A DNA stretch of 60,391 nucleotides, counting the filler, from Sluysia triapertura (Eukaryota), in assembly GCA_046118255.1 (NCBI GenBank). It is 5 parts of 5 records of this genome, joined end to end, with 100 filler letters (N's around TTAATTAATTAA, not from the genome) between each part and the next. Parts side by side here need not be neighbours in the genome. Positions count along the whole stretch, not along the records: positions 11,399 to 25,712 come from JBJNIA010263281.1; 4 more parts are not named here. The stretch is one strand, 5' to 3'. Shown here piece after piece: positions 11,399-25,712 of the stretch. How positions within the stretch are numbered: the first letter of the stretch is position 1; the number at the start of each line of letters is the position of its first letter. Made by a program: the position numbers and the translations under genes. The notes under the pieces are model-generated. The model made no database searches and was not told where the DNA came from. It worked only from the letters and a program-made list of their open reading frames with translations.

Positions 11399-11471
<73 letters not shown>

Positions 11472-13402
11472 AACGCACAAACAATAATTATTATCAATAC
11501 AGCTAAAGAGATTAACGTTACAAGAGCAATGCACAAAATATATGTTGTATCCATGGGTATATAGATATCACTTAATAATTATAAAATAAACAAACATAAA
11601 TGTTCTATTTAAAATAGTAAGTAAATAGTACTATAGAATAAAATCTACTGTCTTTAGCACATTTCAAATGTGTGAGACATTTTTTCACAGAACTCCTTTC
11701 AAAGAAAATTTGATGAAAAAATGAATTGGATACTCAATTACTTAAATTATCAAATATTTAAATCATCATTTAAAAGCCAAAAATATTTCGATATAAATCT
11801 ATCAATGAAATTATTCAAATTTACAAACTATCTCAAATTATTTGATACGCTTATTTTTTCATTATTTTGTTCCATATATTTCTGAATGCTTTTTTGTTGA
11901 ATTAAATTTAATAATGCACTTTAAATATACATTATTTAGGTTAGATTTATGTAAAACTAATTATGCACTTGTAGTGTCTGCATATCCGGTAGCTCGAAAG
12001 TTGTGGTTGCAAACTATAAAATGTTAATGTCGAGGATTTTACAAAATTTATTAGTTTAATTGCCTGGAAGAATTTTATTTCAATTTTTTACGTTATAAAC
12101 ATTTATTAATTTGTGGTCTAACTTAAAAATTACTTTAAAAACGTTTACTTTAAGGCCTTTAACTATGACGAATAAAATTAACTTGAACAGGGAAATTAAA
12201 TTTAAAACGAATTTTATAAATAAGGCACATAAATACCTTTGCACATAGTAGATGAATAAATAGATATGTTAGTGAAATGTCTATTCCAAATAATTGGGCA
12301 TCTTTTACATGCAAAGCAGTAATGATCTTCCATATTAAATTATTAATTGCATTGGTTGGAATAAAAACCTTTAGGAAATGTTAATATATTTATAAATCAT
12401 ATTGTTTAATGTATCAAATCATAGCATAACAGTTGGTTGAGTATGAGATAATTGTTGTATCTAAAAAATTCGCTTGAATCAAGATCTCTAATTAGTATTT
12501 ATCTACAACACTAAAACTTTTTGTAGTCTGATAAAAATGTTTTGTTGATTTCAATATTAACAACGAAAAAAGATCCAGTTGACGCATTAAATTTACATTT
12601 CAAACTAGCTTGTCTTGATGCCCGTGATAAATTGTCGAATCAGCATATTCAATATAAGTACTTGTTTATTAAGTACGAGTTTGTCTGCGTTAGTATTACA
12701 AATAATAACTATCAATGTTATATAAATTATCATAATTAATTGCACAAATGATCAACTACATAAATATTGATCTCTTTAAATTCAAGATGTTCTTACGAAA
12801 AAATTGGTGAAACTAAACTCTCACAATTTTGTATTTCTAATAAATTTTCGTCTTAGATATATAACTAAAAGTGTATATTAAACATCGTTTGGTGTGTTCA
12901 CTTTTCGATTTAATCATAAATCAGTGCTAATTGATCAATAATAACTGCAATAATTTTAAGAGCTTCAAATAAATTTCGCAATTCGCGTTTACAAAAATGA
13001 TACGACTAAATCTAGTAAAGTTTGTATATATATAAACAGAATTTGACTACTACTAATCGTTTATTTTGATCAATATCGATATGTTCTGTAATTGAAATGT
13101 AGCTATCTCTAATTGAGATAATCTATCTTGCTTATTTTTCGCTAAATCTGATTTTATGTAACTTTAAATGTTAGAATTATTTTTANNNNNNNNNNNNNNN
13201 NNNNNNNNNNNNNNNNNNNNNNNNNNNNNNNNNNNNNNNNNNNNNNNNNNNNNNNNNNNNNNNNNNNNNNNNNNNNNNNNNNNNNNNNNNNNNNNNNNNN
13301 NNNNNNNNNNNNNNNNNNNNNNNNNNNNNNNNNNNNNNNNAATTTAATAATTGTTTGAATATTATGCAAGTCGAACAATTTTAATCTATATAGTTATTAA
13401 AA

Positions 13403-13642
13403 TATGCAATTAACAAAGACGTTACTGCCGAAAAGTTAGACATAATTTTGAAATCTGCAAAAATAGATTTTCTTTTCGTATCTTTACTTACAATGTATGC
13501 CAGATTATTAGAAGAGAATTTTAAACCGATATTAGTGAACGTTACGGTTGTTTCCGCTCTAGTTCCGGCAACAGTAGCAGTTGAAAGTGTATCTGTTGCA
13601 GTAAGCGCACCTACAGTTCAAGAAGAAAAGCCTTTGGAAAAG
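13403..13642 (+). pseudogene. RPLP1: 60S acidic ribosomal protein P1 fragment
   Basis: VTAEKLDIILKSAKID...MYARLLE..ILVNV followed by an Ala/Val/Pro-rich hinge and EEK. N-terminus has stops; the C-terminal DDDMGFGLFD motif is absent. Confidence 0.7.
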
Positions 13643-13685
13643 ATCTTTAACGAGATTATGTTGCAAAACAAAAGTAAATTTAAAT

Positions 13686-13827
13686 TTAAACGAAATTAAG
13701 ATCAAACTAGATCATGATATCAAAAGTATGATGATAAGCGCAGAAGCACCGATATTGCTTGCAAAAATGCCCGAGTCATTTATGAGAGAAACATCACTAT
13801 GTACGTCGAGTCATACAGAACGTGATG
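13686..13827 (+). pseudogene. NFYC: NF-YC histone-fold fragment
   Basis: IKIKLDHDIKSMMISAEAPILLAKMPESFMRETSLCTSSHTE resembles NF-YC [24 protein letters not shown]...FITELTLRAWIHTE. Confidence 0.8.
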
Positions 13828-13876
13828 GTAAGGCAATTATGTCTCATTTAATTTTATCAATTTAGGTGTTAGTTTT

Positions 13877-14959
13877 ATGTCAAAAAGCATGTCGAAGTCA
13901 GAAGTTGATAATGGTCAAACGTTGATATCTTTAAGCGATCCAAGAAGATTTGAACACCAAGCCACAGTGCGAGAAGACGTCTTAACCAAAACTGTACAGT
14001 ATTTTGCTATTACTCGTTTTTTTATTACTATTTTTTACGTCAAAAAACATTTTAAATTTATTATGTTAATGTCGGAAAGAGTTGTAAGTGCCAAAATTAA
14101 AGCAATATGTTATGCAAGATTATGTAGTTATCCGAGTTTATGTGAATCTTTCGATGTAGACCAAGATGTTCATGAACTATTAATCGATAAACATAAGTAT
14201 CACGATAATTATATACATAAAATAGTTGTAATTGATATTTTATCAAAACGTTATTTTAAAAAAGGTCATAGCTTACCTATATTAAATGATTTTCAAACTG
14301 TTTCTAAAGATGTCAATAAAGTCATAAAATATGATAGTGTAAACGTAAAGGCATTTTTTACCTTTAAAGAATGCATTAAAGGTTTTGAGTTAGATTTTAA
14401 AAATGCAACTCTATTTTGTAATTGTGCTATACCTTATATTAAATTAAATGATTTTCAAATTGATTTTAAAGAGTGTAATAAAGTTATAGAACGTGATAGT
14501 ATAGACGTTAAGGCATTTTTTAGACGAGCTCTATGTAAGGAAGTCCTTTCAATGCTTGATAGAGCTATTGATGATTTCAAAATTGTATTGATACTAGAAC
14601 CCGAATATAAAACTGCGAGGTTGATCCTTGATGAACTAAGTCTGCGAGGTGTCGTTGATTCGGTGTTCTATGATAATACGTTAGACTATTCACTTTTATT
14701 ATTCATCTTTGACTATTTCAAATTTGTTCATTTTTCTGAATTAATAACAATTAAAAAATTATTAATGAACCCCTTGGTACATGATGTTGTATTTTTAACT
14801 TTTTGCATTCATGTTAGATTTTTGATTCAATATATCAATTTTAGTTATTATTCAAAATTCATTTTGTTGAGCAACTATAATTTTAACAAATATATTTTTT
14901 TAAAAGACCTTAAGTCTTATTTTTCATTAATCTCCGCCACAGCCCGGCCATTACAGTAA
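13877..14959 (+). CDS. 360-aa chimeric ORF containing co-chaperone-type TPR repeats (RPAP3/SPAG1/TOMM34-like)
   Basis: NATLFCNCAIPYIKLNDF...ECNKVIERDSIDVKAFFRRALCKEVL...AIDDFKIVLILEPEYK. One TPR segment is internally duplicated. Confidence 0.6.
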   Translation: MSKSMSKSEVDNGQTLISLSDPRRFEHQATVREDVLTKTVQYFAITRFFITIFYVKKHFKFIMLMSERVVSAKIKAICYARLCSYPSLCESFDVDQDVHELLIDKHKYHDNYIHKIVVIDILSKRYFKKGHSLPILNDFQTVSKDVNKVIKYDSVNVKAFFTFKECIKGFELDFKNATLFCNCAIPYIKLNDFQIDFKECNKVIERDSIDVKAFFRRALCKEVLSMLDRAIDDFKIVLILEPEYKTARLILDELSLRGVVDSVFYDNTLDYSLLLFIFDYFKFVHFSELITIKKLLMNPLVHDVVFLTFCIHVRFLIQYINFSYYSKFILLSNYNFNKYIFLKDLKSYFSLISATARPLQ

Positions 14960-17148
14960 TAGTATCGCGCATCTATTCGTAATGATGACATTTATGATGT
15001 TTGATTAAAAAATTTTAATTCTAGTTTAACTTTACTTTATCAAAGACTTTGTTTTAATCAAGAAACTTATTTTTAAAGTAATTCTTAAGAAACGTTTCCT
15101 GCTATTTAAGAAATTATCGCAAAATAATAAAAAAGTACAAAAATTAGTAAAAATATAAAGTTTTATTTTTACGAGGACATTGTAAACAGAAAGAAATTGA
15201 CAGTTGTGTTTCTACCCCATTCAAACTGTGCCAGGAAGCATAGAAAATCAGAATTATATTCATAATTTAATTTAATACCATTGTGGGAACAAATTTATAC
15301 TTTGATCTAACCGAAAAGTGCACATGAGCGAATACACACACAAACATATATACATTTTATGTATTAAATAAGATCATTTTGAAAAAAAACTGAAAAACTG
15401 ACCCAATACCAAGATCAAACGAAAACACCGCCATGACAAATCATATTATTATACGCATTATGTATATTGTAATAAAATTTGAGGCGTACTGAAACTTTAT
15501 TATCAAAATTTATAATTAAAATTGTGAGAATATTTCAAGTAGAATAAAGTATGATTTTAACATGAGTCCACCAACGTACTAGGTTTACCAGTTATGGCTA
15601 GCCGTTGGATATGTAGATCAACGATTTTTAAGTGAAGGTTAGAAAAACTGTCTAAAGTATGCGTGGTTCTGCTCTTCTTAACTTAACAATTATTGATTTT
15701 CGATTTTAGTAAGTTCTGGAGATATATAAGTTATCTTTAGTTTTCTAAATGATTAAAGCAATTATTTAACTGTAGAAATAAATAATTTATGAAGCATTTT
15801 ACGAAGATCCTATGAAAAGAATCTATGAAAATGATTTTACGGAATTAGACTTAAATTCTAATCGTTGAAATCGTTACTCTTCTGAAGATTTTATAATTAA
15901 AGCTATGAAATTTAACAATGACAAATAATTACTTGAAAAATTTATGAAGCAATAGGTAAATGAAGTTACAATTAAGAATATAATAAAATAAATAATTAAT
16001 GTACGAGGAATTAATTTAATTCCTGAATCAACAATATTTTAGTAAAGATTTTGCATAAGATCTATTATAAAATCTTTTTGAAAAGTAATTACAAAATAAG
16101 TTTAAGTATATTTTACGTGGATATGTCATACATCTGTGACGTATTATTTTGATTAAATCAGAATTTGTCAAATAGGATCCAGCAGATTAAATATCGCTCC
16201 GTAAAAAACTTTTGTTTTCTCAAGATTATGTTAAAGTCGCGCTTGTACCAATAACAATACTAAACTATTTGACAAATTCTGCGACTATTTATAGTCGTCT
16301 TAGCTGGCCTTGGCCATATTAAAACAAATTATTTTAATTAAAATTAAAAGAAATTATTTCATTAAAATTAAATTTAAATTTATTTATATTTAATTAGAAA
16401 TTTAGAAATCCAAATTTATATTTAATAATGTAAAAGTTTCTTACGTTAAAATTAATTTTTTTAATCCAAATAAATGAATAAAATTAGTTCTTCAAATTCA
16501 AATAAATAAAATAACACTGAATTATTACAAATGAATAAAATTATCAATAAAATCAATAGTAATCACATATAATTGAAGTCTGATATAAAGATAAAAGTCA
16601 TTGAACATTGATTTACAATAAAAGATTAAAATCGTAATTATAAAGTTGTAATCATTAATTCACAAAATAATAATAATTAATTGAAGTTTGCTATTGATTG
16701 TTTTGGAAAATAAAATAGTGGATGTCAGTAATTTGTTTTGTTAATGCCACCTCAATCATTTGTTGTAAGTACAGTGGTAATCATTGTATTTCATCAATAG
16801 TCATTCGACTCATTTATCTAATGAATTACCTACTAATTTGCTCATTGTCAATTTCACGTTTTACTTCGCGTATCGTTAAAAATTTCTACAATAAAATTAC
16901 ATTGCAATGTCAATGACTTAGAGTTGGCTCTCAAATTTATAATCCTGATCAGTTTTGCAGTACTATCGACAAATGGGTGATTTGAAGCAGATAATAACTT
17001 TGATTTAACTGTTAGCTTCATATTTTATTTTTCAATTATAGTTTCGTACTGTTTCACTCCTTTTATCAAGAATACGAACGACATAATCGAATGTAAACTT
17101 AATTATGTCGTTTTATTATGCACGCTATTATACATTTTATTACACATA

Positions 17149-17336
17149 CATGTAATTGGTGGTACACGTAATAGTAGCTATGATGATTCAAAAAATGCTT
17201 ACATAAATGGTTGTCATGATCACATAAATTATCGTTTTGAAGAAGTAAAAGCACTAGTTAAAGGTAGTTTTAGTCAAGTTGTAATGCCTTATGATCACAA
17301 ATGTAATTCTTACGTTGCTTTAAATTGATACGTAAT
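17149..17336 (+). pseudogene. DYRK2/3-class kinase fragment (DH box to subdomain II)
   Basis: GGTRNSSYDDSKNAYINGCHDHINYRFEEVKALVKGSFSQVVMPYDHKCNSYVAL, then a frameshift into LIRN. Glycine loop is degenerate. Confidence 0.85.
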
Positions 17337-18281
17337 TATGTCGTTTTATTATTATTTGTTTTATTGTACATGCTATCGAAAACGATTAATGTTTCAATTT
17401 ATGATTACAAATTTTTACCATTCTTTCAAGTAAACTTTCTCTTCCTTTGTATCACAAGACTTAGTTTTAATTTACTAAGAAGTATTTTTCTCATGTCATA
17501 CAGATTCATATTATTCGCTGCACGTTTATAATGGCTAGAGACGTTTTTATCCGATAAACTAAAAATAGAATATCATTGTTTTACAAATCGCAGTGTACCG
17601 ATAACGTTGCTTGTTTTTATAGAAATTATAAAATATTATAAATAATTATATTATATTTCAAAATCATTCTTCTAAAGATGGTGACGTTATTAAAGCATGG
17701 AAAAATGTAGAATTTACTTTTTCATTGAATTATATACTTGCTCGGTCAATGACCATACATGAGTGAATATTTCCCGGCAGCTATGATTGGAATACACTTA
17801 TTAATTATATTAAACATTTAATAACATTAATCATTATTATTATTTATATTTTTCCAATTGTTATGTTGAAAAATAAATTCAACCTTTGTTATTTTTTAAA
17901 TTTGTGATTTACAAAAGGCTTTAAACCTAATTTATTAATTGTTTTAAAGTTCAATTTAAATTGTTTTTTGTTAAGTAGATTTTTTAACTTTTTTAATAAA
18001 AATTTAAAAACAAAGTTTAATATTTCGAATAATTGCTATAAAAGAAAAGAAATAAACAAAAATAATTAGAAATTTCTAATATTAAAAGATAAAAAGCCTT
18101 TCCCACTTTAATCTTGCATGGAAAAACTGGAACGAGAAGGAAAACTTGATTCACTTTCTAAAACGACGCTTGGATTGACTGGAAACTCTGAATTTTAAAT
18201 ATTGCCGAACAAAGCAATTGACAAGATGGCTACTACGCGTAAAAATGAATCGTGAATTTACTAATGATTTCTTTATGATTA

Positions 18282-18439
18282 TGTTGGGGTAAATAGGCCT
18301 AAAGTGCCATGATGGTAATATTGACTATACTAAACTAAAATTGTTAGACAAGGCTGATAGCTCAGTAGTAGAGCATCGAACTGCATAACGAGAAGTTCCG
18401 GGTTCGATCCCCGATCAGTCCATTTTACGAAATCTAACA
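18282..18439 (+). mobile_element. 158-bp solo-LTR-like element with embedded tRNA-derived unit (18351-18422), copy 1
   Basis: TGTTGG...CTAACA ends, 4-bp TSD ATTA/ATTA, A box TAGCTCAGTAGT and B box GGTTCGATCC. Confidence 0.85.
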
Positions 18440-18499
18440 ATTAGATGTAGGTATTCATACAAATCCACAGCCAATCATAGGCGAGTAGAAATCTATAAT

Positions 18500-18524
18500 G
18501 TTCTAGAATATTCTAGAAACTTCT
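18500..18524. promoter_or_regulatory. Five-unit heat shock element, with a CCAAT box at 18471
   Basis: gTTCtaGAAtaTTCtaGAAacTTCt, five perfectly alternating nGAAn units. Confidence 0.6.
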
Positions 18525-19259
18525 TTTCTTTTTTTAGTAAGCACTTTTCGTTTTTAGAAAATAAGATATCTTTTGTGGAAAATAAATATTTTTAAAGTGA
18601 TTTTAAAGACAAATAAATAATTTTAGAGCTTTTTATATGATTTTAAAGAGTTGTGATGACAACTTAACAGATTGATTGAGTGTATTATATTACTTAGAGT
18701 GAATATTATATTAAATTTGGATTTGGTATTAATTAAATGGGAAAATAATTTTTTAGATTTTGACTTATAAGATACGGAACTTAAGTTATTTGCACAGGGT
18801 TATATTTTACGTATTCAAAGTCGATTTTAATGGTGACATAATCAGAAAAGTGTTATGATCTGCTATCACTTAATATGACTACCAATCATACTTATATAGT
18901 TTACACAAGAATGTGACATTATATTTTATGTCATAATAAAATCCTGCAATCACAATTGCTTTTGATAATTTAAAAGTTCGCCTGTGATCCAAGTGTTACA
19001 ATTAAGGATTCATCCACGGGATTTAAATGTTAAATAATCAAGAGAGGTCGAATAATTAAATGCAGCAGTATTTTAACTTCATAAATACTGTGTAGTTCTT
19101 GGAGTCAAGTAAAATGAAGCACTCAAATGCAATAATCTTACAAACTTTCAAATATTATGTAGTTTTCCATGCGAATTTTGGCTGAGTTTTTGTTAACTCT
19201 TTAGGATTATTTTTTAGCTTCAGCTAGTTTAATTTAAAATAACGTATTTAAGACCTTTT

Positions 19260-19441
19260 TGTTAGACTTTAATAAATGGACTGATGTTAGGCTCAATAAA
19301 CTCGGGCCTTCTAATCTCACAGCTGTGCAGTTCGATGTTCTGGCCAATAAGCTATCGGTCCTGTCTAACATTTTTATTTTATTTTAGTCAATAATACTAT
19401 CACTATTCTAAGTGGCACTTTTTGAGGTCTATACCTCAACA
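19260..19441 (-). mobile_element. tRNA-carrying solo-LTR-like element, diverged copy 3
   Basis: Colinear with copies 1 and 2, both TG/CA ends present, TTTT/TTTT flanks (low-complexity TSD). Confidence 0.75.
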
Positions 19442-21559
19442 TTTTTATTTTATCATCGTATTTAAACCTATGTGAAAAGATTTTAAAAGTTGACTTATTT
19501 TGCAAGTTTAAAGCTGCATAATTTTGAATATATTTTGAATCCTATTGAAAAGAATTTCACTAATATTTCTAAAGTTAATAGAATTCAATCTTTTTTCGGA
19601 GGGGGAGTAATCAAACTTTTAATTTTGCTTCCATTCAAATGTGTATTGTGGCGAACCCAAGATCAAATTACAATAACAATGACAAACAAACACCAACACA
19701 AATTAACACATCTTACATAAACAAGTTATTAAATAAACTACAACATACTAAACCACTATAAAATACATATAAAACACAAGCACAGTTGTAATAATATCAT
19801 ATTTTGTTAAATCTTACCTGTTATTACTATTATTATTTTTATATTGTTAATGAGCATTGTTATTGGTATTGGCATTGTTGTTTATGCTGGTGTTTATAGT
19901 GTGATGACGTAATGATTGATGACATATTAATATTATTATTGACGTTTTAATATTATTATTGATTATTGATGATTTATTATTAGTAACAACTGTTGTGTAC
20001 ATTATTATTGTTTTATTTATTGATTTTAATAATACTATTTATATTTTTAACATAATTATAACAATTGATTTACATTTGGAATATAATATTATTTTTGATT
20101 TTCGGAAAATAAACTAGCGTAAGTGTTTATTAATTTATAAAATAAATAGTTTTTATATCATGTTTTAAACTATTTCGTTTTTTTTAAATTAAGTAGTTTT
20201 TTATATATGTCGTTTTGTTTTAAATTAATTCGGTCAAAGACATTACAAAAATACACAAATGCATATGAAAAAAATTTACAGCTCACACAAAAAAATTTAA
20301 AACTACAATAGAGTTTCGTTGGTCAAGGACACATATTGTCAAATCTAAGGAAAACGTCTCCTCACTTGATTTTTTAAACTACAATAGAGTTTCACTGTAC
20401 AATTTCAAGAAACACTTCTTCTCACTTGACAAAGAACACCCAATTGATCAAAAACTTTTGTTTAATTTAAAATACACTTAAAATAAAATTATTTTTCACT
20501 TAGTTAAATTGAATTTAAAATTAATCCACTAAATTCTATTTAAGCGGCAAAATAGTTATTGATATTATATACGTGTACAGTCATTCGTTCTATAATTTGT
20601 CTTATGTAATTTTGAATACTGTCTGATAATATACTTTAAGATTTTACTTTTCTTTGTAGAGATAAAATAATTGTTTTTCTGCTATAGCATAAAAAGGCTA
20701 TAAAATTGAGTAATTTCGTTGTACATAAATATTGCATGACATATTTTAAAAACTTCATATACTACTACGTAACTTTTTTCATCAGAATTAATTAATGATT
20801 GGTGTCAATCGCAGTCACTATCAACTTATGCTGCTTTGTACATAAAAGACAAGTTGTGCAGTTCAAAGACGGTCATTTAGTGTAAGTGATAAAATTTACT
20901 CAACTTCTTTTATATTTTGGGTTTCACGTTTTATGTTATACATTTAATATAAGATTTCCGTTTTATTATGTTTATTTAGTTAAATCAGTTTCAATTCAAT
21001 TTTTGACATTTTACTGTTTACACGGTTTGAAGGGCTTTAATGTCTTTAAAACTTTAATTAACTTTATGTAAAAATTAAAACCAAAGTTTAAACGATTTAA
21101 AAATTAAACGATTTAAACTTTCTAAAGTTAATAAATTATGAAACAAAACAGGCTTAATGCCTTTAAAAATTTTAAAACATATAAACAACAAAATTTGAAA
21201 ACTTTTTATTAAAGAGCAATATAAGAATTAAAAACATAAAATAACATAAATCATTGTTTTTATGAATAAAGAAAATAGACTATCCGGTAGCATTTCCATT
21301 GATAAACGTTTTTGATCATTTTGTTTTGTAATTAAGTTTAATAACATAGTTGAATTTATCATTGAAACAAATTATTTAGTTAATTTTGTCTAACTTAGAA
21401 ATATTGATGTTTTCGGCTATAGTTAATAATTAGTATTTTTTTTTATTTTATTTATTTTATTACTCTTGCAATTACAGGTTAGAAGATACAGTGACTTATT
21501 ATAACGAAATCAATGTAATCATCTGAGCTCTGGTTTTTTGCAATATAATTAAAATCTGG

Positions 21560-22230
21560 AAATAAATCCCATATGCATTTTGCAAACTAACATCAGCTTC
21601 AGATTGTCGATTTATTTCATATTGCACAGATCTTTCTGCTTGATAAGTGACATCTAAATCACGATTCTGATCGCCGAATTGCTGTACAATTTGTGAATAT
21701 TGTTTTTCCAATTCCATCGACAACTTAATTTCTGCATAAGTTTCATTAATATTATTGATGACAACAAAAGTTACAATGACAGCGGTGGATTCGGAATAGT
21801 TTTCATATTTCTGAATCCTCGAATTTTAAATATGGAAACACTATACCAGAGGAGTTTCCAATACAAGCCAATAATTGAGTTACATAAGTAGTTGTTTCAA
21901 AGCTATATTCATCATAAAATAATGTAAAGGTGATTCGATAAAGCAATTATTATTATCTGGAGCGAGAGGTTTGAAATAATAATCTTTAAAATAATAATCT
22001 TATCGAAATAATCTTTATTCTGACGTGTTGTACTTTCCAGTGCACTCCACAACAACACTGGATCCGTTATTATTTGTGCTGGCATCTTCCCACAGCTTAA
22101 CAAACCAGCTACTGGAATTGGAGTAGTTATGCATAATACTACATTTTTAGCCACAAGTTTGTCTCATTTATAAAAACATATAATTATTATTGATTCTACT
22201 TAAGCTCCGATACGATTGTAAAGGCAGATG
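21560..22230 (-). pseudogene. NPC1: Niemann-Pick C1 fragment (middle luminal domain to start of sterol-sensing domain)
   Basis: ITDPVLLWSALESTTRQNKDYFD, FKPLAPDNNNCFIESPLHYF, CIGNSSGIVFP, STAVIVTFVV, VTYQAERSVQYEINRQSEADV, interrupted by stops, frameshifts and deletions. Confidence 0.85.
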
Positions 22231-23348
22231 GAAATTCTAGCCGTTTTAATCAATAGTATTGGGACTGGTGAAAGATAAGGGTAGATATGTAGGTTCAAGA
22301 CTCAGGATGACAGAATAAGGTGAACATTATGATGAATTATAATAATAAGATAAGCACATGAAATACTTGAATCATGATAAAACTATGAGAAAAACGAATA
22401 AGTAACCTTTTACAGGGTTTTTATTTGTTAAAATACTAAAGTACATATGTTAATTAACTTAATTAAAATTTATCTAATTTGGTAACTCAATAAAAATGTT
22501 TGTCCATGATATAATGATATTTAATTTAGTGCATAATGTTGAGTTTTATTATTGGTTTTAATGATGAAGTATTGCGAAGCACGTCAACATAAATAATGTA
22601 AATTTTAGTTATTTTAATTAGTTTTTGTAATTTGTAATTAAAGTTGAATATGTTCCGATGTTTAAATATTGATAAAGTAAATATCAAATTGATGCTTATA
22701 AAGATACTAATTCATGTTATTAAAATTGACATGCGACGTACAGTTGACGCACAACGTATTAATGCATAATACTCCTATGAGAAATAGATTTATTATTTCA
22801 TAAATTTTATTTTAAAATTTAATAGCAATGTAACGATGAATTTAACTTGTGATTAGGTGATATGAAGAAGATAAGGGGATTGTTGACCACAAATCCTATT
22901 ATCTTTAGATAATTAAAATTAGATTGAATTTCAGTATAGAAGGAAATTGCTGTCAAATTTTCAATCAGTAAAATTAGTCCGGTTAATACCGCCTAAAAAA
23001 GAACAGACAGCTTTAATTTCCGTCTTGTTCAATTCCTAATTTTAATTTCCTACAGAATCCAGGCCCTCTCGCTGCGCAGTTAGATGAATGGAAAACTTTT
23101 ATTTTACAACAAATACAAGTCTGTACATTAATAGGATATATAATCAAATAATATGGTATAATAGATATTAACATAGGAATCACACTAAGTTAATGTAACA
23201 AAGCTGGTAATGATAAGCTTGTCCATTTAAGAAATAGTTGTTCGTGCTGCTGATGATGAGGAAAATGTTAATGTTGAAGTTTAGAGCCACAAGCATACCA
23301 CTGATAAGTCAGAAACATACTATAAACATATATTGAAATGAGAGAAAG

Positions 23349-23505
23349 TGTTAGACTTCGTAAAATGGACTGACCGGGGATCGAACCCGGGACCATCGTC
23401 CGCGCAGTCGATGCTCTACCACTGAGCTATCAGCCCCGTCTAACAATTTCATTTTTATTAAATTCAATTTTACCAAATGGCACTTTTGGGCCTTTTACCC
23501 CAACA
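23349..23505 (-). mobile_element. 157-bp solo-LTR-like element with embedded tRNA-Ala-like unit (23436-23366), copy 2 (best preserved)
   Basis: TG...CA ends, 4-bp TSD AAAG/AAAG, paired acceptor, D and T stems, intact A and B boxes. Confidence 0.88.
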
Positions 23506-23574
23506 AAAGTATGATATTAAATCACAGATATACAATTAAGTGGGTGAAATAAAGAAACGAGAAATAAAGAACCT

Positions 23575-23661
23575 ATTGAGCTATCAGCCCTAACAATTTT
23601 GTTTTAGTATAGTCAATTACAGTATCATTACTCTATGCCACTGTAGGCTTGTATCCCAACA
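23575..23661 (-). mobile_element. Partial (5' half) copy of the tRNA-carrying LTR-like family
   Basis: TGAGCTATCAGCCC-TAACAATTT...TAGTCAAT...TGCCACT...AGGC...CCCAACA matches copies 1 and 2. Confidence 0.75.
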
Positions 23662-24803
23662 TAAAGATGAACTTTTTACCGTTGTGTCATCTTTGATCAT
23701 AAGTGGATATTTATCTGAGTTTATAATTTCATTATAATAATTTCATTATAATTAGAATTTTTTAGATGAATTAAAGTTTTTTGAAAAACTTAATTAGACA
23801 CTAATTAAACTTATTATTATTAGCTTATATAGTTACAGGAACGCACTCTTTACGACACATGTTTACTGTAACCGAAAAAAATTTTTTTGCTTAGGTTGTA
23901 TTAGAAAAATAAATAGCACTACAGCAAGTGTTGCGATGTGTGTACGCTTAATATAAGTATGGCCAAATGTTTTGGAATTTTATATAAACATTATAACCTT
24001 TATTCATTGCTTATATATCCAACTATACTGTTAAATTTTACTTTATTAAAATATAAATTTCATTTTGTATATTTAATCGACTAAAGAGGATTGTGAGGTA
24101 AAGTTTTAAGAAATAAAGTTCTAAGTGAATCAGAAAAATGAAGTCAGAGGTTTTAAATCATAAGATTTTCCATCTTAAACTCAACTTCTTAGATACAATT
24201 CATTTTAATAAGATACTCAACGTAATTAAATAAATTAGATTAAATATAGATAAATTAGGACTACCAAGTTTAATAATTTTGATCGGATTTTATTAATAGA
24301 TTAATATTCATAGAAATCTGAAATAGAAGAGGCCACAAAAAGAGTAAAGACTAATTTAATTTTATACTAATTTAATTTTACAATTGCAAACCTAACAAAA
24401 TAATTTGAAAAATTCTAAAAACTATTGAGCCTATAGATTTTAAATTTAAAAAATTACGCAATATAAAACCAATTGCGATGCAACCAAAATTATAATATCC
24501 CAAAAACAGTTTGAGTTCCACATAATTTAACATATTTACAATCAAGACTAAATATTGAATCTTTTCGGACCAAAATGGATATTACATTTAATAACTGTTG
24601 CAAAAAGCAGTGGCATATTGTAGTTAACTAGCTGAATTAATTTTTCAGTAGCTTTTAAAGTTAGAGATTTTGTTTTTGTTAAAAAATAACCTCATAAAAT
24701 GTATTTTGTAATATTGAAACGAAACAAATTATAAAAGAACATGATATAAAATTATATTGAAGCTCTAATAAAGTCTCCATTTCAAACGGAAATTAAAAAT
24801 ACA

Positions 24804-24871
<68 letters not shown>

Positions 24872-24876
24872 TCGAA

Positions 24877-25712
24877 TTATTTACAATATCTTGATTTAAG
24901 AAGATATTTAATATCATCCAATGTCAGTCCAGTTAAATTAGGCCTATAATCATCAAATATATCACTACTAATTTCGTCGATTACTTTATTCAAATTAGAC
25001 TTAATTTCATTTATATCTAAAGACATTTCTGTGGCCAATTTTCCGTCCAAAAAAAAATTCTGTTCTTCTTCAGGTTTAGACGATAGCCATTTTCTTAAGG
25101 ATTCGTCAGTGCAATAGTTCAAATTAACACAATTGTTTAATATTCGTAAAATTATTCCATATTTTTTAATAAATTCCATCGAAAAAGTGCGGCTAGTAAT
25201 TGGAGATAATAAAGACTGAAATGAAAGGTTAGAATTAGATAAACATAATAAGTAGAACGTAGCTAACATATTATCATGTTGTCTAGTAAATGAAATAGAA
25301 TGAATCAATATTCGACAGTAAACTGCGATTTTCTTACTCATTTTGATTTCTTCTAAAACACAATTTAAATACGTCCATTTAATATCTTCAAGTTGAAAAT
25401 TTAAGCAATTCAACTGATTAAAAATTTCACTGACGATTTTAAAAGACAATATGGCAATCAGAGGCCAAGTTATTTGTAAATCTGGTATTAAATTTTGCAA
25501 AATACGTTGAAAATATAGTTTAGCGTCTTCCAATGTTTGTGCACATATGGTTTCATGGATTTTTATTTGTCTTTCTTCAGCATTACATTCAGCAATAGAT
25601 TTGATTTGTTGATCAATTTCTTCTGACGTTAATTTGGAAATCTTAGGCAATTCTTTCACTGAATCATCTTTCACAATGAGATTTATTTTCAATTTGGATG
25701 AATTATTTGAAT
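24877..25712 (-). CDS. Orphan ORF or terminal exon of at least 271 aa, 5' end runs toward an assembly gap
   Basis: Long stop-free frame with protein-like composition; no domain recognised. Confidence 0.55.

What the first reader, a model, noticed from the sequence alone, without database searches (positions are those of the whole stretch)
23349..23445. Embedded tRNA keeps alanine identity and a terminator but has a broken anticodon arm, inside its own inverted repeat
Seen (copy 2, minus strand): acceptor GGGCTGA/TCAGTCC-A with a G3:U70 pair and A73, D stem GCTC/GAGC, T stem CCGGG/CCCGG with a TTCGATC loop, then TTTT. The anticodon region is a 3-4 bp stem with a 10-nt loop that differs among copies. 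The unit is bracketed by a perfect TGTTAGAC...GTCTAACA repeat whose right half is the element end. G3:U70 is the alanyl-tRNA synthetase determinant and T4 terminates Pol III (established). Inference: each insertion could make an aminoacylatable, non-decoding tRNA mimic, and the inner TG...CA cassette may have been a mobile unit itself.
Basis: partly seen in the sequence, partly recalled or inferred. Interest (0 to 1): 0.7.

Follow-up and report, generated by a model that had tools for sequence, protein, structure and literature searches.

The report
tRNA-bearing solo LTR of miniature retrotransposon
The "embedded tRNA" is real, but it is the built-in tRNA-like module of a 157-bp long terminal repeat from a very abundant miniature LTR retrotransposon, a kind described in 2024 as Helenus/TRIMp3, so it is a new family of a known kind and not a new kind of tRNA mimic.

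Summary
Window 23366-23436 (-) is a tRNA-like sequence (Rfam tRNA, 53.7 bits) with G3:U70, A73, intact D and T arms, a non-canonical anticodon arm and a TTTT directly after it. It is bracketed by a perfect TGTTAGAC/GTCTAACA inverted repeat at 23349-23445.

It is not a free-standing cassette. It is the 3' two-thirds of a 157-bp unit (23349-23505, -) with TG...CA ends and a 4-bp target duplication. Elsewhere in the genome the same unit occurs as direct pairs around a constant 93-nt internal part. That part starts TT+TGGTGAGCCCAC (PBS-like) and ends GGGTGAGATA (PPT-like). The whole is a 407-bp TRIM, and the window holds two solo LTRs plus two degraded LTR copies.

This matches Helenus/TRIMp3 (Kojima 2024): tRNA-like LTRs, and 4-bp duplications in animals. 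The published consensus file lacks this family's motifs.

Copies decay neutrally: there are no compensatory changes, and stems decay about as fast as flanks. The anticodon region is the most variable part. No stand-alone inner cassette was found (0 against 2,557 canonical junctions). No RNA data exist, so Pol III transcription and any charging remain inference.

Verdict: new member of a known kind, of modest interest.

The parts
23349..23505 (-). Solo LTR, copy 2 (157 nt), of the young subfamily. Ends are TGTTGGGG...GTCTAACA.
   Evidence: Whole-LTR copies 97-99% identical exist elsewhere.
23345..23348 (.). Target-site duplication AAAG (+ strand), 3' side of copy 2.
   Evidence: The same four bases recur at 23506-23509.
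23506..23509 (.). Target-site duplication AAAG (+ strand), 5' side of copy 2.
23366..23436 (-). tRNA-like module with G3:U70, A73, intact acceptor, D and T arms and a non-canonical anticodon arm. Proposed to be the R region and Pol III promoter of the LTR.
   Evidence: Rfam tRNA 53.7 bits. ARAGORN tRNA-???. Fold.
23419..23429 (-). Box A (TAGCTCAGTGG).
   Evidence: Read from the sequence. Invariant in 15 of 15 sampled copies.
23377..23387 (-). Box B (GGTTCGATCCC).
   Evidence: Read from the sequence. Nearly invariant.
23362..23365 (-). T4 run directly after A73, a candidate Pol III terminator.
   Evidence: Kept in 26 of 28 copies.
23349..23356 (-). LTR 3' terminus GTCTAACA (outer arm of the 8-bp inverted repeat), the expected integrase end.
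23438..23445 (-). Inner TGTTAGAC, 2 nt upstream of the tRNA-like 5' end (inner arm of the inverted repeat).
   Evidence: Conserved in the family to the same degree as its neighbours.
23446..23505 (-). Left, U3-like part of the LTR, with an A/T-rich stretch just upstream of the tRNA-like module.
18282..18439 (+). Solo LTR, copy 1 (158 nt, older subfamily), with TSD ATTA at 18278-18281 and 18440-18443. Its tRNA-like part is 18351-18422.
19260..19397 (-). Old, degraded LTR copy, about 72% identical to the consensus.
23577..23661 (-). 3'-truncated LTR of an older subfamily: the left part plus the first ~19 nt of the tRNA-like module.

Best explanation
The feature is the tRNA-like module of a solo long terminal repeat. 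The LTR belongs to a very abundant, non-coding, 407-bp LTR retrotransposon in miniature (TRIM), built as LTR (157 bp), 93-nt internal part, LTR.

Each LTR has three parts:
- a ~60-nt left part;
- TGTTAGAC and a 1-2-nt spacer, then a 71-72-nt tRNA-derived sequence with perfect A and B boxes;
- TTTT, then a 13-nt tail ending GTCTAACA.

Shown here:
- TG...CA ends and 4-bp target duplications;
- full-length copies with a PBS-like TGG motif 2 nt after the 5' LTR and a purine-rich tract before the 3' LTR;
- thousands of copies, some 97-99% identical to copy 2;
- neutral decay of individual copies.

Inferred, from the published account of Cassandra and the proposal for Helenus/TRIMp3:
- The tRNA-like module serves the element as an internal RNA polymerase III promoter and, together with the T run, defines the repeated R region of the genomic RNA.
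- Some polymerases must read through the weak T4 run of the 5' LTR and stop in the 3' LTR.
- The RNA is then reverse-transcribed and integrated in trans by a Gypsy-type element, which gives the 4-bp duplication.
- LTR-LTR recombination leaves solo LTRs such as the two in this window.

A solo LTR keeps a complete Pol III unit. It may therefore emit a ~75-nt tRNA-like RNA as a by-product. Nothing indicates that such an RNA is selected for.
For: - Sharp unit boundaries. Perfect 4-bp TSDs in 16 of 32 copies, where chance gives about 1%, and in 4 of 8 copies of an unbiased sample.
- Full-length copies exist. L096 has TSD TTAT on both sides, and L156, L092, L091, L093-L098 and L028 share the structure. 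All have a 93-nt internal part of constant length starting TTTGGTGAGCCCAC and ending GGGTGAGATA.
- The internal part is itself highly repeated, with at least 1,077 first-look candidates. Contigs of run X1 gave 13,370 laid pieces across LTR and internal part.
- tRNA family matches score 29.7-53.7 bits in 15 places among 20 sampled loci.
- There are 52,007 first-look tRNA candidates in the genome and 2,557 exact junction words.
- Kojima 2024 (PMC10886601) defines Helenus as TRIMs with tRNA-like LTRs, with 4-bp TSDs in animals and sizes such as 157/94/408.
- Box A and box B are invariant or nearly so.
- There are no T4+ runs between the two terminators of a full element, against four A4+ runs.
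Against: - No RNA data. No RNA run holds the sequence, so Pol III transcription, read-through of the T4 and the R boundaries are all inferred.
- The absence of T runs is not significant on its own (P about 0.3-0.4 in shuffles).
- No tRNA of this assembly ending ...GTGGGCTCA was found to match the PBS-like motif.
- No autonomous partner was identified.
- In the assembly the young subfamily is seen only as solo LTRs. I attribute this to short-read assembly breaking at the repeat, but that is an argument, not a measurement.
Confidence: 0.85

Rival explanations
1. Each insertion is a working gene for an aminoacylatable, non-decoding tRNA-Ala mimic, transcribed by Pol III, processed, CCA-tailed and charged by AlaRS through G3:U70. 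This product would matter to the cell or to the element.
For: - A and B boxes are complete, and T4 follows A73 directly.
- G1-C72, G2-C71, G3:U70 and A73 are present. G3:U70 is kept in 26 of 28 and in 14 of 15 copies.
- The acceptor and T arms, which are the parts RNase P, RNase Z, the CCA enzyme and AlaRS mainly read (established knowledge), are intact.
- The predicted fold keeps the acceptor and T arm.
Against: - G3:U70 is no better kept than any other position.
- Stems decay like flanks. Private changes are 1.8% against 3.1% (p=0.06) in one set and 2.9% against 2.1% (p=0.19) in the other. Among changed stem pairs, 25 are broken, 8 are one-sided and 0 are compensatory. The covariation score equals that of shuffles.
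- The isotype of origin is ambiguous, since tRNA-Cys fits as well.
- Kojima 2024 judges Helenus tRNA-like parts unlikely to be functional tRNAs.
- No RNA evidence exists.
Confidence: 0.08
2. The inner TGTTAGAC...GTCTAACA cassette (97 bp) was once the whole LTR, or a mobile unit of its own. The present LTR would have gained its ~60-nt left part later, for example by a shift of the plus-strand priming site.
For: - LTR ends are normally short inverted repeats. The inner site is a perfect 8-bp mirror of the 3' end, while the real 5' end shares only TGTT.G with it.
- The stretch just upstream of the inner site is A-rich.
Against: - A search for the cassette start preceded by non-canonical bases gave 0 hits, against 2,557 canonical junctions. 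Given about 24% detection, that puts stand-alone cassettes below roughly 0.5%.
- None of the LTR copies or fragments aligned (107 hits in 88 loci) starts at the inner site.
- The oldest subfamily seen already has the left part.
Confidence: 0.12
3. The unit is a DNA transposon derivative, a MITE of a Ginger1-like, integrase-type family. TGTNR ends and 4-bp TSDs would fit, and it would have captured a tRNA pseudogene.
For: - The ends TGTTG and TGTTA fit TGTNR, and TSDs are 4 bp, as described for Ginger1 (Bao et al. 2010, PMC2836005, found).
- Most assembled copies are single units.
Against: - Direct pairs of the unit flank a constant 93-nt part with PBS-like and PPT-like ends and an outer TSD.
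- There are no long terminal inverted repeats.
- Integrase-type ends and 4-bp TSDs are equally the hallmark of Gypsy-mobilised LTR elements.
Confidence: 0.03
4. The unit is an ordinary tRNA-derived SINE mobilised by a LINE.
For: It has a tRNA-like sequence with Pol III boxes and a high copy number.
Against: - The tRNA-like part lies at the 3' side of the unit, behind 68 nt that a Pol III start at the tRNA could not include.
- The ends are exact TG...CA, with no A-rich or microsatellite tail.
- The TSD is fixed at 4 bp.
- The element has LTR-PBS-PPT architecture.
Confidence: 0.02

Closest known systems
Helenus / TRIMp3 (Kojima 2024, Biology 13:119, PMC10886601)
   Same: - Non-coding TRIM whose LTRs contain a tRNA-derived sequence with conserved box A and box B.
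- 4-bp TSDs, as in animal Helenus.
- Size in the published range: 157/93/407 here, against for example 157/94/408 and 130/93/353.
- Many solo LTRs.
- A tRNA-like part that a tRNA finder cannot assign cleanly.
   Different: - None of this family's diagnostic motifs occurs in the published consensus file, so it is a separate family.
- Copy number looks higher than the largest published family (5,575 LTRs): 2,557 exact junction words and about 52,000 rough tRNA-like candidates here.
- A T4 run sits directly after the tRNA-like part.
- A perfect 8-bp inverted repeat brackets the module.
- No tRNA matching the PBS was found.
- The host organism could not be named.
Cassandra (Kalendar et al. 2008; described in PMC10886601 and PMC7215508)
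   Same: A TRIM whose LTRs carry a Pol III gene-derived module, with both promoter and terminator conserved. Transcription is said to start in the 5' LTR module and end in the 3' LTR module.
   Different: The module is 5S rRNA-derived, not tRNA-derived. Cassandra occurs in plants, and its Pol III transcripts have been shown experimentally. Here nothing is known about RNA.
tRNA-derived SINEs (SINE2)
   Same: A tRNA-derived Pol III promoter module reused by a non-autonomous retroelement, producing large numbers of tRNA pseudogene calls in genome annotation.
   Different: SINEs carry the tRNA head at the 5' end and a LINE-related or A-rich tail, with variable TSDs. They use target-primed reverse transcription, not LTR-PBS-PPT replication with integrase.
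Ginger1 DNA transposons (Bao, Kapitonov, Jurka 2010, PMC2836005)
   Same: TGTNR termini and 4-bp TSDs made by a Gypsy-like integrase.
   Different: Ginger elements have terminal inverted repeats and move as DNA. This element has direct terminal repeats with PBS-like and PPT-like junctions.

Membership tests
TRIM (terminal-repeat retrotransposon in miniature) | Two direct terminal repeats around a short non-coding internal part, under 1 kb in all | tested here: met
   L096, L156, L092 and others have LTR of ~157 bp, a 93-nt internal part and a second LTR, 407 bp in all. The internal part is 93 nt in 8 of 8 copies.
TRIM (terminal-repeat retrotransposon in miniature) | LTR ends TG...CA and a short target duplication of fixed length | tested here: met
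   Ends are TGTTGG...TCTAACA. Perfect 4-bp TSDs in 16 of 32 copies and in 4 of 8 of an unbiased sample. The full element L096 has TTAT on both sides.
TRIM (terminal-repeat retrotransposon in miniature) | Primer-binding site next to the 5' LTR, complementary to a tRNA | tested here: inconclusive
   A conserved TGGTGAGCCCAC starts 2 nt after the LTR. A pattern search for a tRNA ending ...GTGGGCTCA found no exact match, and one-mismatch hits were near control level. None of the 20 fetched tRNAs fits.
TRIM (terminal-repeat retrotransposon in miniature) | Polypurine tract directly before the 3' LTR | tested here: met
   GGGTGAGATA (8 of 10 purines) abuts the 3' LTR. It is exact in 5 of 8 copies and differs by one or two bases in the other 3. 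The evidence is sequence-level only.
Helenus / TRIMp3 | tRNA-derived sequence inside the LTR with conserved box A (TRGCY..YGG) and box B (GGTTC) | tested here: met
   Rfam tRNA scores up to 53.7 bits. TAGCTCAGTGG and GGTTCGATCCC are invariant or nearly so.
Helenus / TRIMp3 | Transcription of the element from the LTR's Pol III promoter | not testable with these tools
   No RNA run holds the sequence. This is also not yet shown experimentally for published Helenus.
Helenus / TRIMp3 | Sequence kinship to a published Helenus family (not a defining feature; it decides 'known family' against 'new family') | tested here: not met
   Six diagnostic motifs were searched in the paper's consensus FASTA. 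There were no hits apart from one unrelated 8-mer.
Functional tRNA-Ala gene | 5-bp anticodon stem, 7-nt loop and an Ala anticodon | tested here: not met
   ARAGORN gives tRNA-???. The region is 21-29 nt long and differs in sequence and length between subfamilies.
Functional tRNA-Ala gene | G3:U70 with A73 | tested here: met
   Present in copy 2, and G3:U70 in 26 of 28 and 14 of 15 copies. It is no better conserved than other positions.
Functional tRNA-Ala gene | Purifying selection on pairing: compensatory changes, or stems decaying more slowly than flanks | tested here: not met
   No compensatory changes were seen. Among changed stem pairs, 25 are broken and 8 are one-sided. Shuffles reach the observed score.
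tRNA-derived SINE | tRNA head at the 5' end, a LINE-type or A-rich 3' tail and variable TSDs | tested here: not met
   The tRNA-like part lies 68 nt inside the unit. The 3' end is an exact CA and the TSD is a fixed 4 bp.
MITE of Ginger1 type | Terminal inverted repeats of tens of bp, with TGTNR ends and 4-bp TSD | tested here: not met
   The ends and TSD fit, but the two ends share only TGTT.G. The unit also occurs as direct repeats around a PBS/PPT-bearing core.

The most novel reading that the evidence does not exclude
The tRNA-like module could be more than a borrowed promoter. As the whole R region, closed by the 8-bp leader/trailer stem in read-through RNA, it would act as a structured strand-transfer element. 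Terminated transcripts from the thousands of assembled LTR copies (at least 2,557 exact junction words; tens of thousands only by the rough first-look count) would be processed into a stable, CCA-ended, G3:U70-bearing RNA that AlaRS can charge. That would be a retroelement-made pool of non-decoding Ala-tRNA mimics with consequences for the host.
Probability: 0.08. Interest if true: 0.6.

Novelty: new member of a known kind. Interest (0 to 1): 0.3.

Why it matters
The practical point is annotation. This one family yields thousands of sequences that pass the Rfam tRNA threshold, possibly tens of thousands. Those sequences would inflate tRNA gene counts and tRNA-Ala or undetermined pseudogene calls, and the repeat breaks short-read assemblies.

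The biological points are these:
- It adds a very high-copy, recently active family to the small set of LTR retroelements that appear to run on a Pol III promoter (Cassandra, Helenus, Ajax).
- It has an unusually complete module: a full cloverleaf apart from the anticodon arm, its own T-run terminator and a bracketing inverted repeat.
- That makes it a convenient case for testing how a Pol III terminator inside both LTRs is bypassed once and used once, and whether solo LTRs emit tRNA-like RNAs.

Tried and rejected
1. One 4.9-kb element with inverted terminal repeats (DIRS-like) spanning copy 1 to copy 2. There are no ORFs of 90 aa or more between them and each copy has its own TSD, so these are two separate insertions.
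2. MITE or Ginger-type DNA transposon. This was my first reading, from the TGTNR ends and 4-bp TSD. I dropped it once LTR-internal-LTR copies were found.
3. Classical SINE. The architecture rejects it.
4. Stand-alone inner cassettes. None were found.
5. Avoidance of T runs on the sense strand as proof of Pol III read-through. The direction is right (0 T4+ against 4 A4+), but it is not significant.
6. Primer tRNA for the PBS. Not found.
7. Derivation from tRNA-Ala. The tRNA-Ala genes found by pattern lie on GC-rich contigs that look foreign to this AT-rich genome. An AT-rich-flanked tRNA-Cys matches the 5' two-thirds equally well, so the origin is left open.
8. Cross-species conservation. Runs labelled as other organisms hold the element, but at roughly 100- to 5,000-fold lower depth depending on the run and with the same consensus. 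Index hopping cannot be separated from true relatives.
9. Naming the organism.
   - The protein atlas search was uninformative.
   - There are several different COX1 genes.
   - The search of earlier findings was not open.
Later sequences came through the fetch from genomes.

Full report
**What is in the window.**
The piece (11399-25712) is AT-rich, about 25% G+C.
- At 23366-23436 on the minus strand lies a 71-nt sequence that Rfam's tRNA model scores at 53.7 bits over its full length. ARAGORN reports it as a tRNA of undetermined type with an abnormal anticodon loop.
  - an acceptor stem GGGCTGA/TCAGTCC with G3:T70 and A73;
  - the D stem GCTC/GAGC and a T stem CCGGG/CCCGG around TTCGATC;
  - TTTT directly after A73;
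  - a perfect TGTTAGAC...GTCTAACA inverted repeat whose limits are exactly 23349 and 23445.
- A second, more decayed copy lies at 18351-18422 on the plus strand (36.7 bits).

**The repeat unit.**
A search of the window's own genome (619 Mb, 263,945 contigs) with copy 1 and its flanks gave thousands of first-look candidates.
- Aligning 32 copies with their flanks shows a unit of about 157 bp with sharp ends, TGTTGGGG at the 5' end and GTCTAACA at the 3' end.
- The tRNA-like part occupies the 3' two-thirds. About 60 nt of other conserved sequence lie before the inner TGTTAGAC.
- Sixteen of 32 copies have a perfect 4-bp target duplication and six more match at 3 of 4 bases. Chance would give about 1%.
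- In the window the units are:
  - 18282-18439 (+), with TSD ATTA;
  - 23349-23505 (-), with TSD AAAG on the plus strand;
  - an old degraded copy at 19260-19397 (-);
  - a 3'-truncated copy at 23577-23661 (-).
- The 4.9 kb between copies 1 and 2 has no long ORF and each copy has its own duplication. They are independent insertions, not the ends of one element.

**What the unit is.**
TG...CA ends with a 4-bp duplication point to an integrase. I first considered a Ginger-like MITE.
- An all-against-all comparison of flanks then showed that three copies share the sequence immediately downstream of their 3' end. In one locus that sequence runs into a second unit in the same orientation.
- Searching with that 93-nt stretch showed it is itself highly repeated. 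There were at least 1,077 first-look candidates, with full-length matches at 90-94% identity.
- Eight fetched places all show the same architecture: LTR, then TT, then TGGTGAGCCCAC..., 93 nt in all, ending in GGGTGAGATA, then a second LTR. The internal part is 93 nt in all eight.
- L096 is a complete 407-bp element with the duplication TTAT on both sides. L156, from an independent sample, is another complete element.
- This is the structure of a terminal-repeat retrotransposon in miniature (TRIM). The window's copies are solo LTRs.

**Literature.**
A full-text search found Kojima 2024 (PMC10886601). [quoted passage not shown] - It groups Helenus with Cassandra (5S rRNA in the LTR) and Ajax as TRIMp3.
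- Its table of families includes sizes almost identical to this one, such as 157/94/408.
- None of six diagnostic motifs of the present family occurs in the paper's consensus file, so this is a further family and not a published one.

**Abundance and age.**
- A 27-nt word across the left-part/cassette junction occurs exactly 2,557 times.
- The tRNA model has about 52,000 rough first-look candidates in the genome.
- In contigs of the public run that best holds the sequence, 13,370 pieces lie on one full element, and both LTR and internal part are very deep.
- Copy 2 belongs to a young subfamily with whole-LTR copies 97-99% identical to it.
- In a sample of 20 junction hits taken in contig order, two loci contain the internal part and the rest are solo or cut by a contig end. 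Fifteen tRNA-model matches of 29.7-53.5 bits were found in those 20 loci.
- Very many contigs end inside this repeat. Young full-length copies with two identical LTRs are therefore probably lost or broken in this assembly, and the solo-to-full ratio cannot be measured from it.

1. Selection on the tRNA shape.
   - In 28 copies retrieved without regional bias, private non-CpG changes are 1.8% in stems and 3.1% in the left part (p=0.06). In the young set they are 2.9% against 2.1% (p=0.19).
   - Of the changed stem pairs, 25 are broken, 8 are kept by a one-sided change and none is compensatory.
   - On 15 copies the pair-counting tool finds 91% of cells paired, no change on both sides, and shuffles that reach the observed values.
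   - G3:U70 is kept in 26 of 28 and 14 of 15 copies, no better than other positions.
2. The anticodon arm.
   - It is the most variable stretch, partly through CpG decay.
   - It differs between subfamilies in sequence and length: CGAGA, CTAGA and ACGAT versions, and a 7-nt insertion in an older subfamily.
   - No decoding-type arm is maintained.
3. Alanine identity.
   - Pattern searches found tRNA-Ala genes, but on short contigs with about 45% G+C flanks that look foreign to this genome.
   - Among tRNAs with AT-rich flanks, a tRNA-Cys matches the first two-thirds of the module as well as any tRNA-Ala. The T arm resembles a tRNA-Ala-TGC type.
   - The isotype of origin is open, and G3:U70 could be one transition away from G3:C70.
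4. The inner cassette as a mobile unit.
   - No copy or fragment among those aligned (107 hits in 88 loci) begins at the inner TGTTAGAC.
   - A genome-wide pattern requiring non-canonical bases before the cassette found nothing, against 2,557 canonical junctions.
5. RNA. No RNA run holds the sequence, so expression, CCA addition and charging could not be examined.

**How it most likely works.**
- Shown: the architecture, the ends, the duplications, the copy number, the recent activity and the neutral decay.
- Inferred from the Cassandra precedent and Kojima's proposal:
  - The A and B boxes drive Pol III from a start just upstream of the tRNA-like 5' end.
  - The left part then acts as U3, the tRNA-like part with its T run as R, and the 13-nt tail as U5.
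  - Polymerases that read through the weak T4 run of the 5' LTR and stop at the T4 run of the 3' LTR yield an RNA of about 325 nt with R at both ends.
  - That RNA is primed at the TGG motif, copied, and integrated by a Gypsy-type integrase supplied in trans, giving 4-bp duplications.
- Consistent with this, a full element has no T4+ run between the two terminators but four A4+ runs. This is not significant alone.
- The 8-bp inverted repeat has two non-exclusive readings. It may be a vestige of an older, shorter LTR whose ends were TGTTAGAC...GTCTAACA. Alternatively it may be a leader/trailer stem that closes the tRNA-like R region in read-through RNA, since the predicted fold pairs it. Neither reading is tested.

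**Caveats.**
- The assembly is mixed.
  - It contains bacterial-type tRNAs with encoded CCA and at least four different COX1 genes.
  - It also contains GC-rich contigs with vertebrate-type tRNA genes.
  - I cannot say whether those GC-rich contigs are human-like. I stopped working on them once I noticed this, and searched for no more of them.
- Runs labelled as other organisms hold the element at far lower depth, roughly 100- to 5,000-fold depending on the run, with the same consensus. That could be kinship or cross-contamination between libraries.

**Verdict.**
The thing itself is the tRNA-like LTR of a Helenus-type TRIM. It is a new and very abundant family of a kind described in 2024, not a new class of tRNA mimic.

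Noticed in passing
G000 contigs C190656, C43764, C261684 and others (loci L099-L112, L121, L123, L124): Short contigs with about 45% G+C flanks carry vertebrate-type tRNA-Ala, Lys, Phe and Thr genes, some in clusters, unlike the ~25% G+C of the window's genome. This is probably foreign DNA in the assembly, possibly vertebrate. I did not pursue them further.
   Followed up: no
G000 (loci L117, L118; COX1 hits): The assembly holds tRNAs with genomically encoded CCA (bacterial type) and at least four different full-length COX1 genes with TGA read as Trp. It therefore mixes several organisms.
   Followed up: partly
L127-L132, L136 (G000 C131737, C259702, C234, C192765, C40602, C1425, C29988): These are rare TRIM copies (10 genome hits of CCATTTGGTGAGCCCAC). 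Their 5' LTR lacks the 17 nt holding the T4 run and the tail, through a deletion between two CATTT words, while the 3' LTR is intact. This fits a slip during plus-strand strong-stop synthesis or later replication slippage. These 5' LTRs have no T4 terminator.
   Followed up: partly
L131, L135, L136; window 23577-23661: An older subfamily has a longer left part (TGTTGGGATACAGGCC...) and a 7-nt insertion (TTGTGAA) in the anticodon region of the tRNA-like module.
   Followed up: partly
Many G000 contigs: Contigs very often end inside this repeat, especially at the junction between the left part and the tRNA-like part. The family is a major cause of fragmentation in this assembly.
   Followed up: partly
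L062 (G000:C200776): One LTR copy has about 690 bp of unrelated sequence replacing tRNA-like positions ~10-37, either a nested insertion with deletion or a chimeric contig.
   Followed up: no
window 11399-11470 and 24803-24870: Long (TAA)n microsatellites lie at both ends of the piece.
   Followed up: no
window 13877-14959 (+): A 360-aa ORF with a weak TPR match (Pfam E 0.008, below the cut-off) contains an 83-nt direct repeat at 14278-14360 and 14440-14522. Whether it is a real gene is unknown.
   Followed up: partly
runs X2-X4 laid on L096: Sequencing runs labelled as other organisms hold the TRIM, including a 221-nt contig spanning LTR start, internal part and tRNA-like part. Depth is roughly 100- to 5,000-fold lower, depending on the run, and the consensus is the same. 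It is either relatives with few copies or cross-library carry-over.
   Followed up: partly
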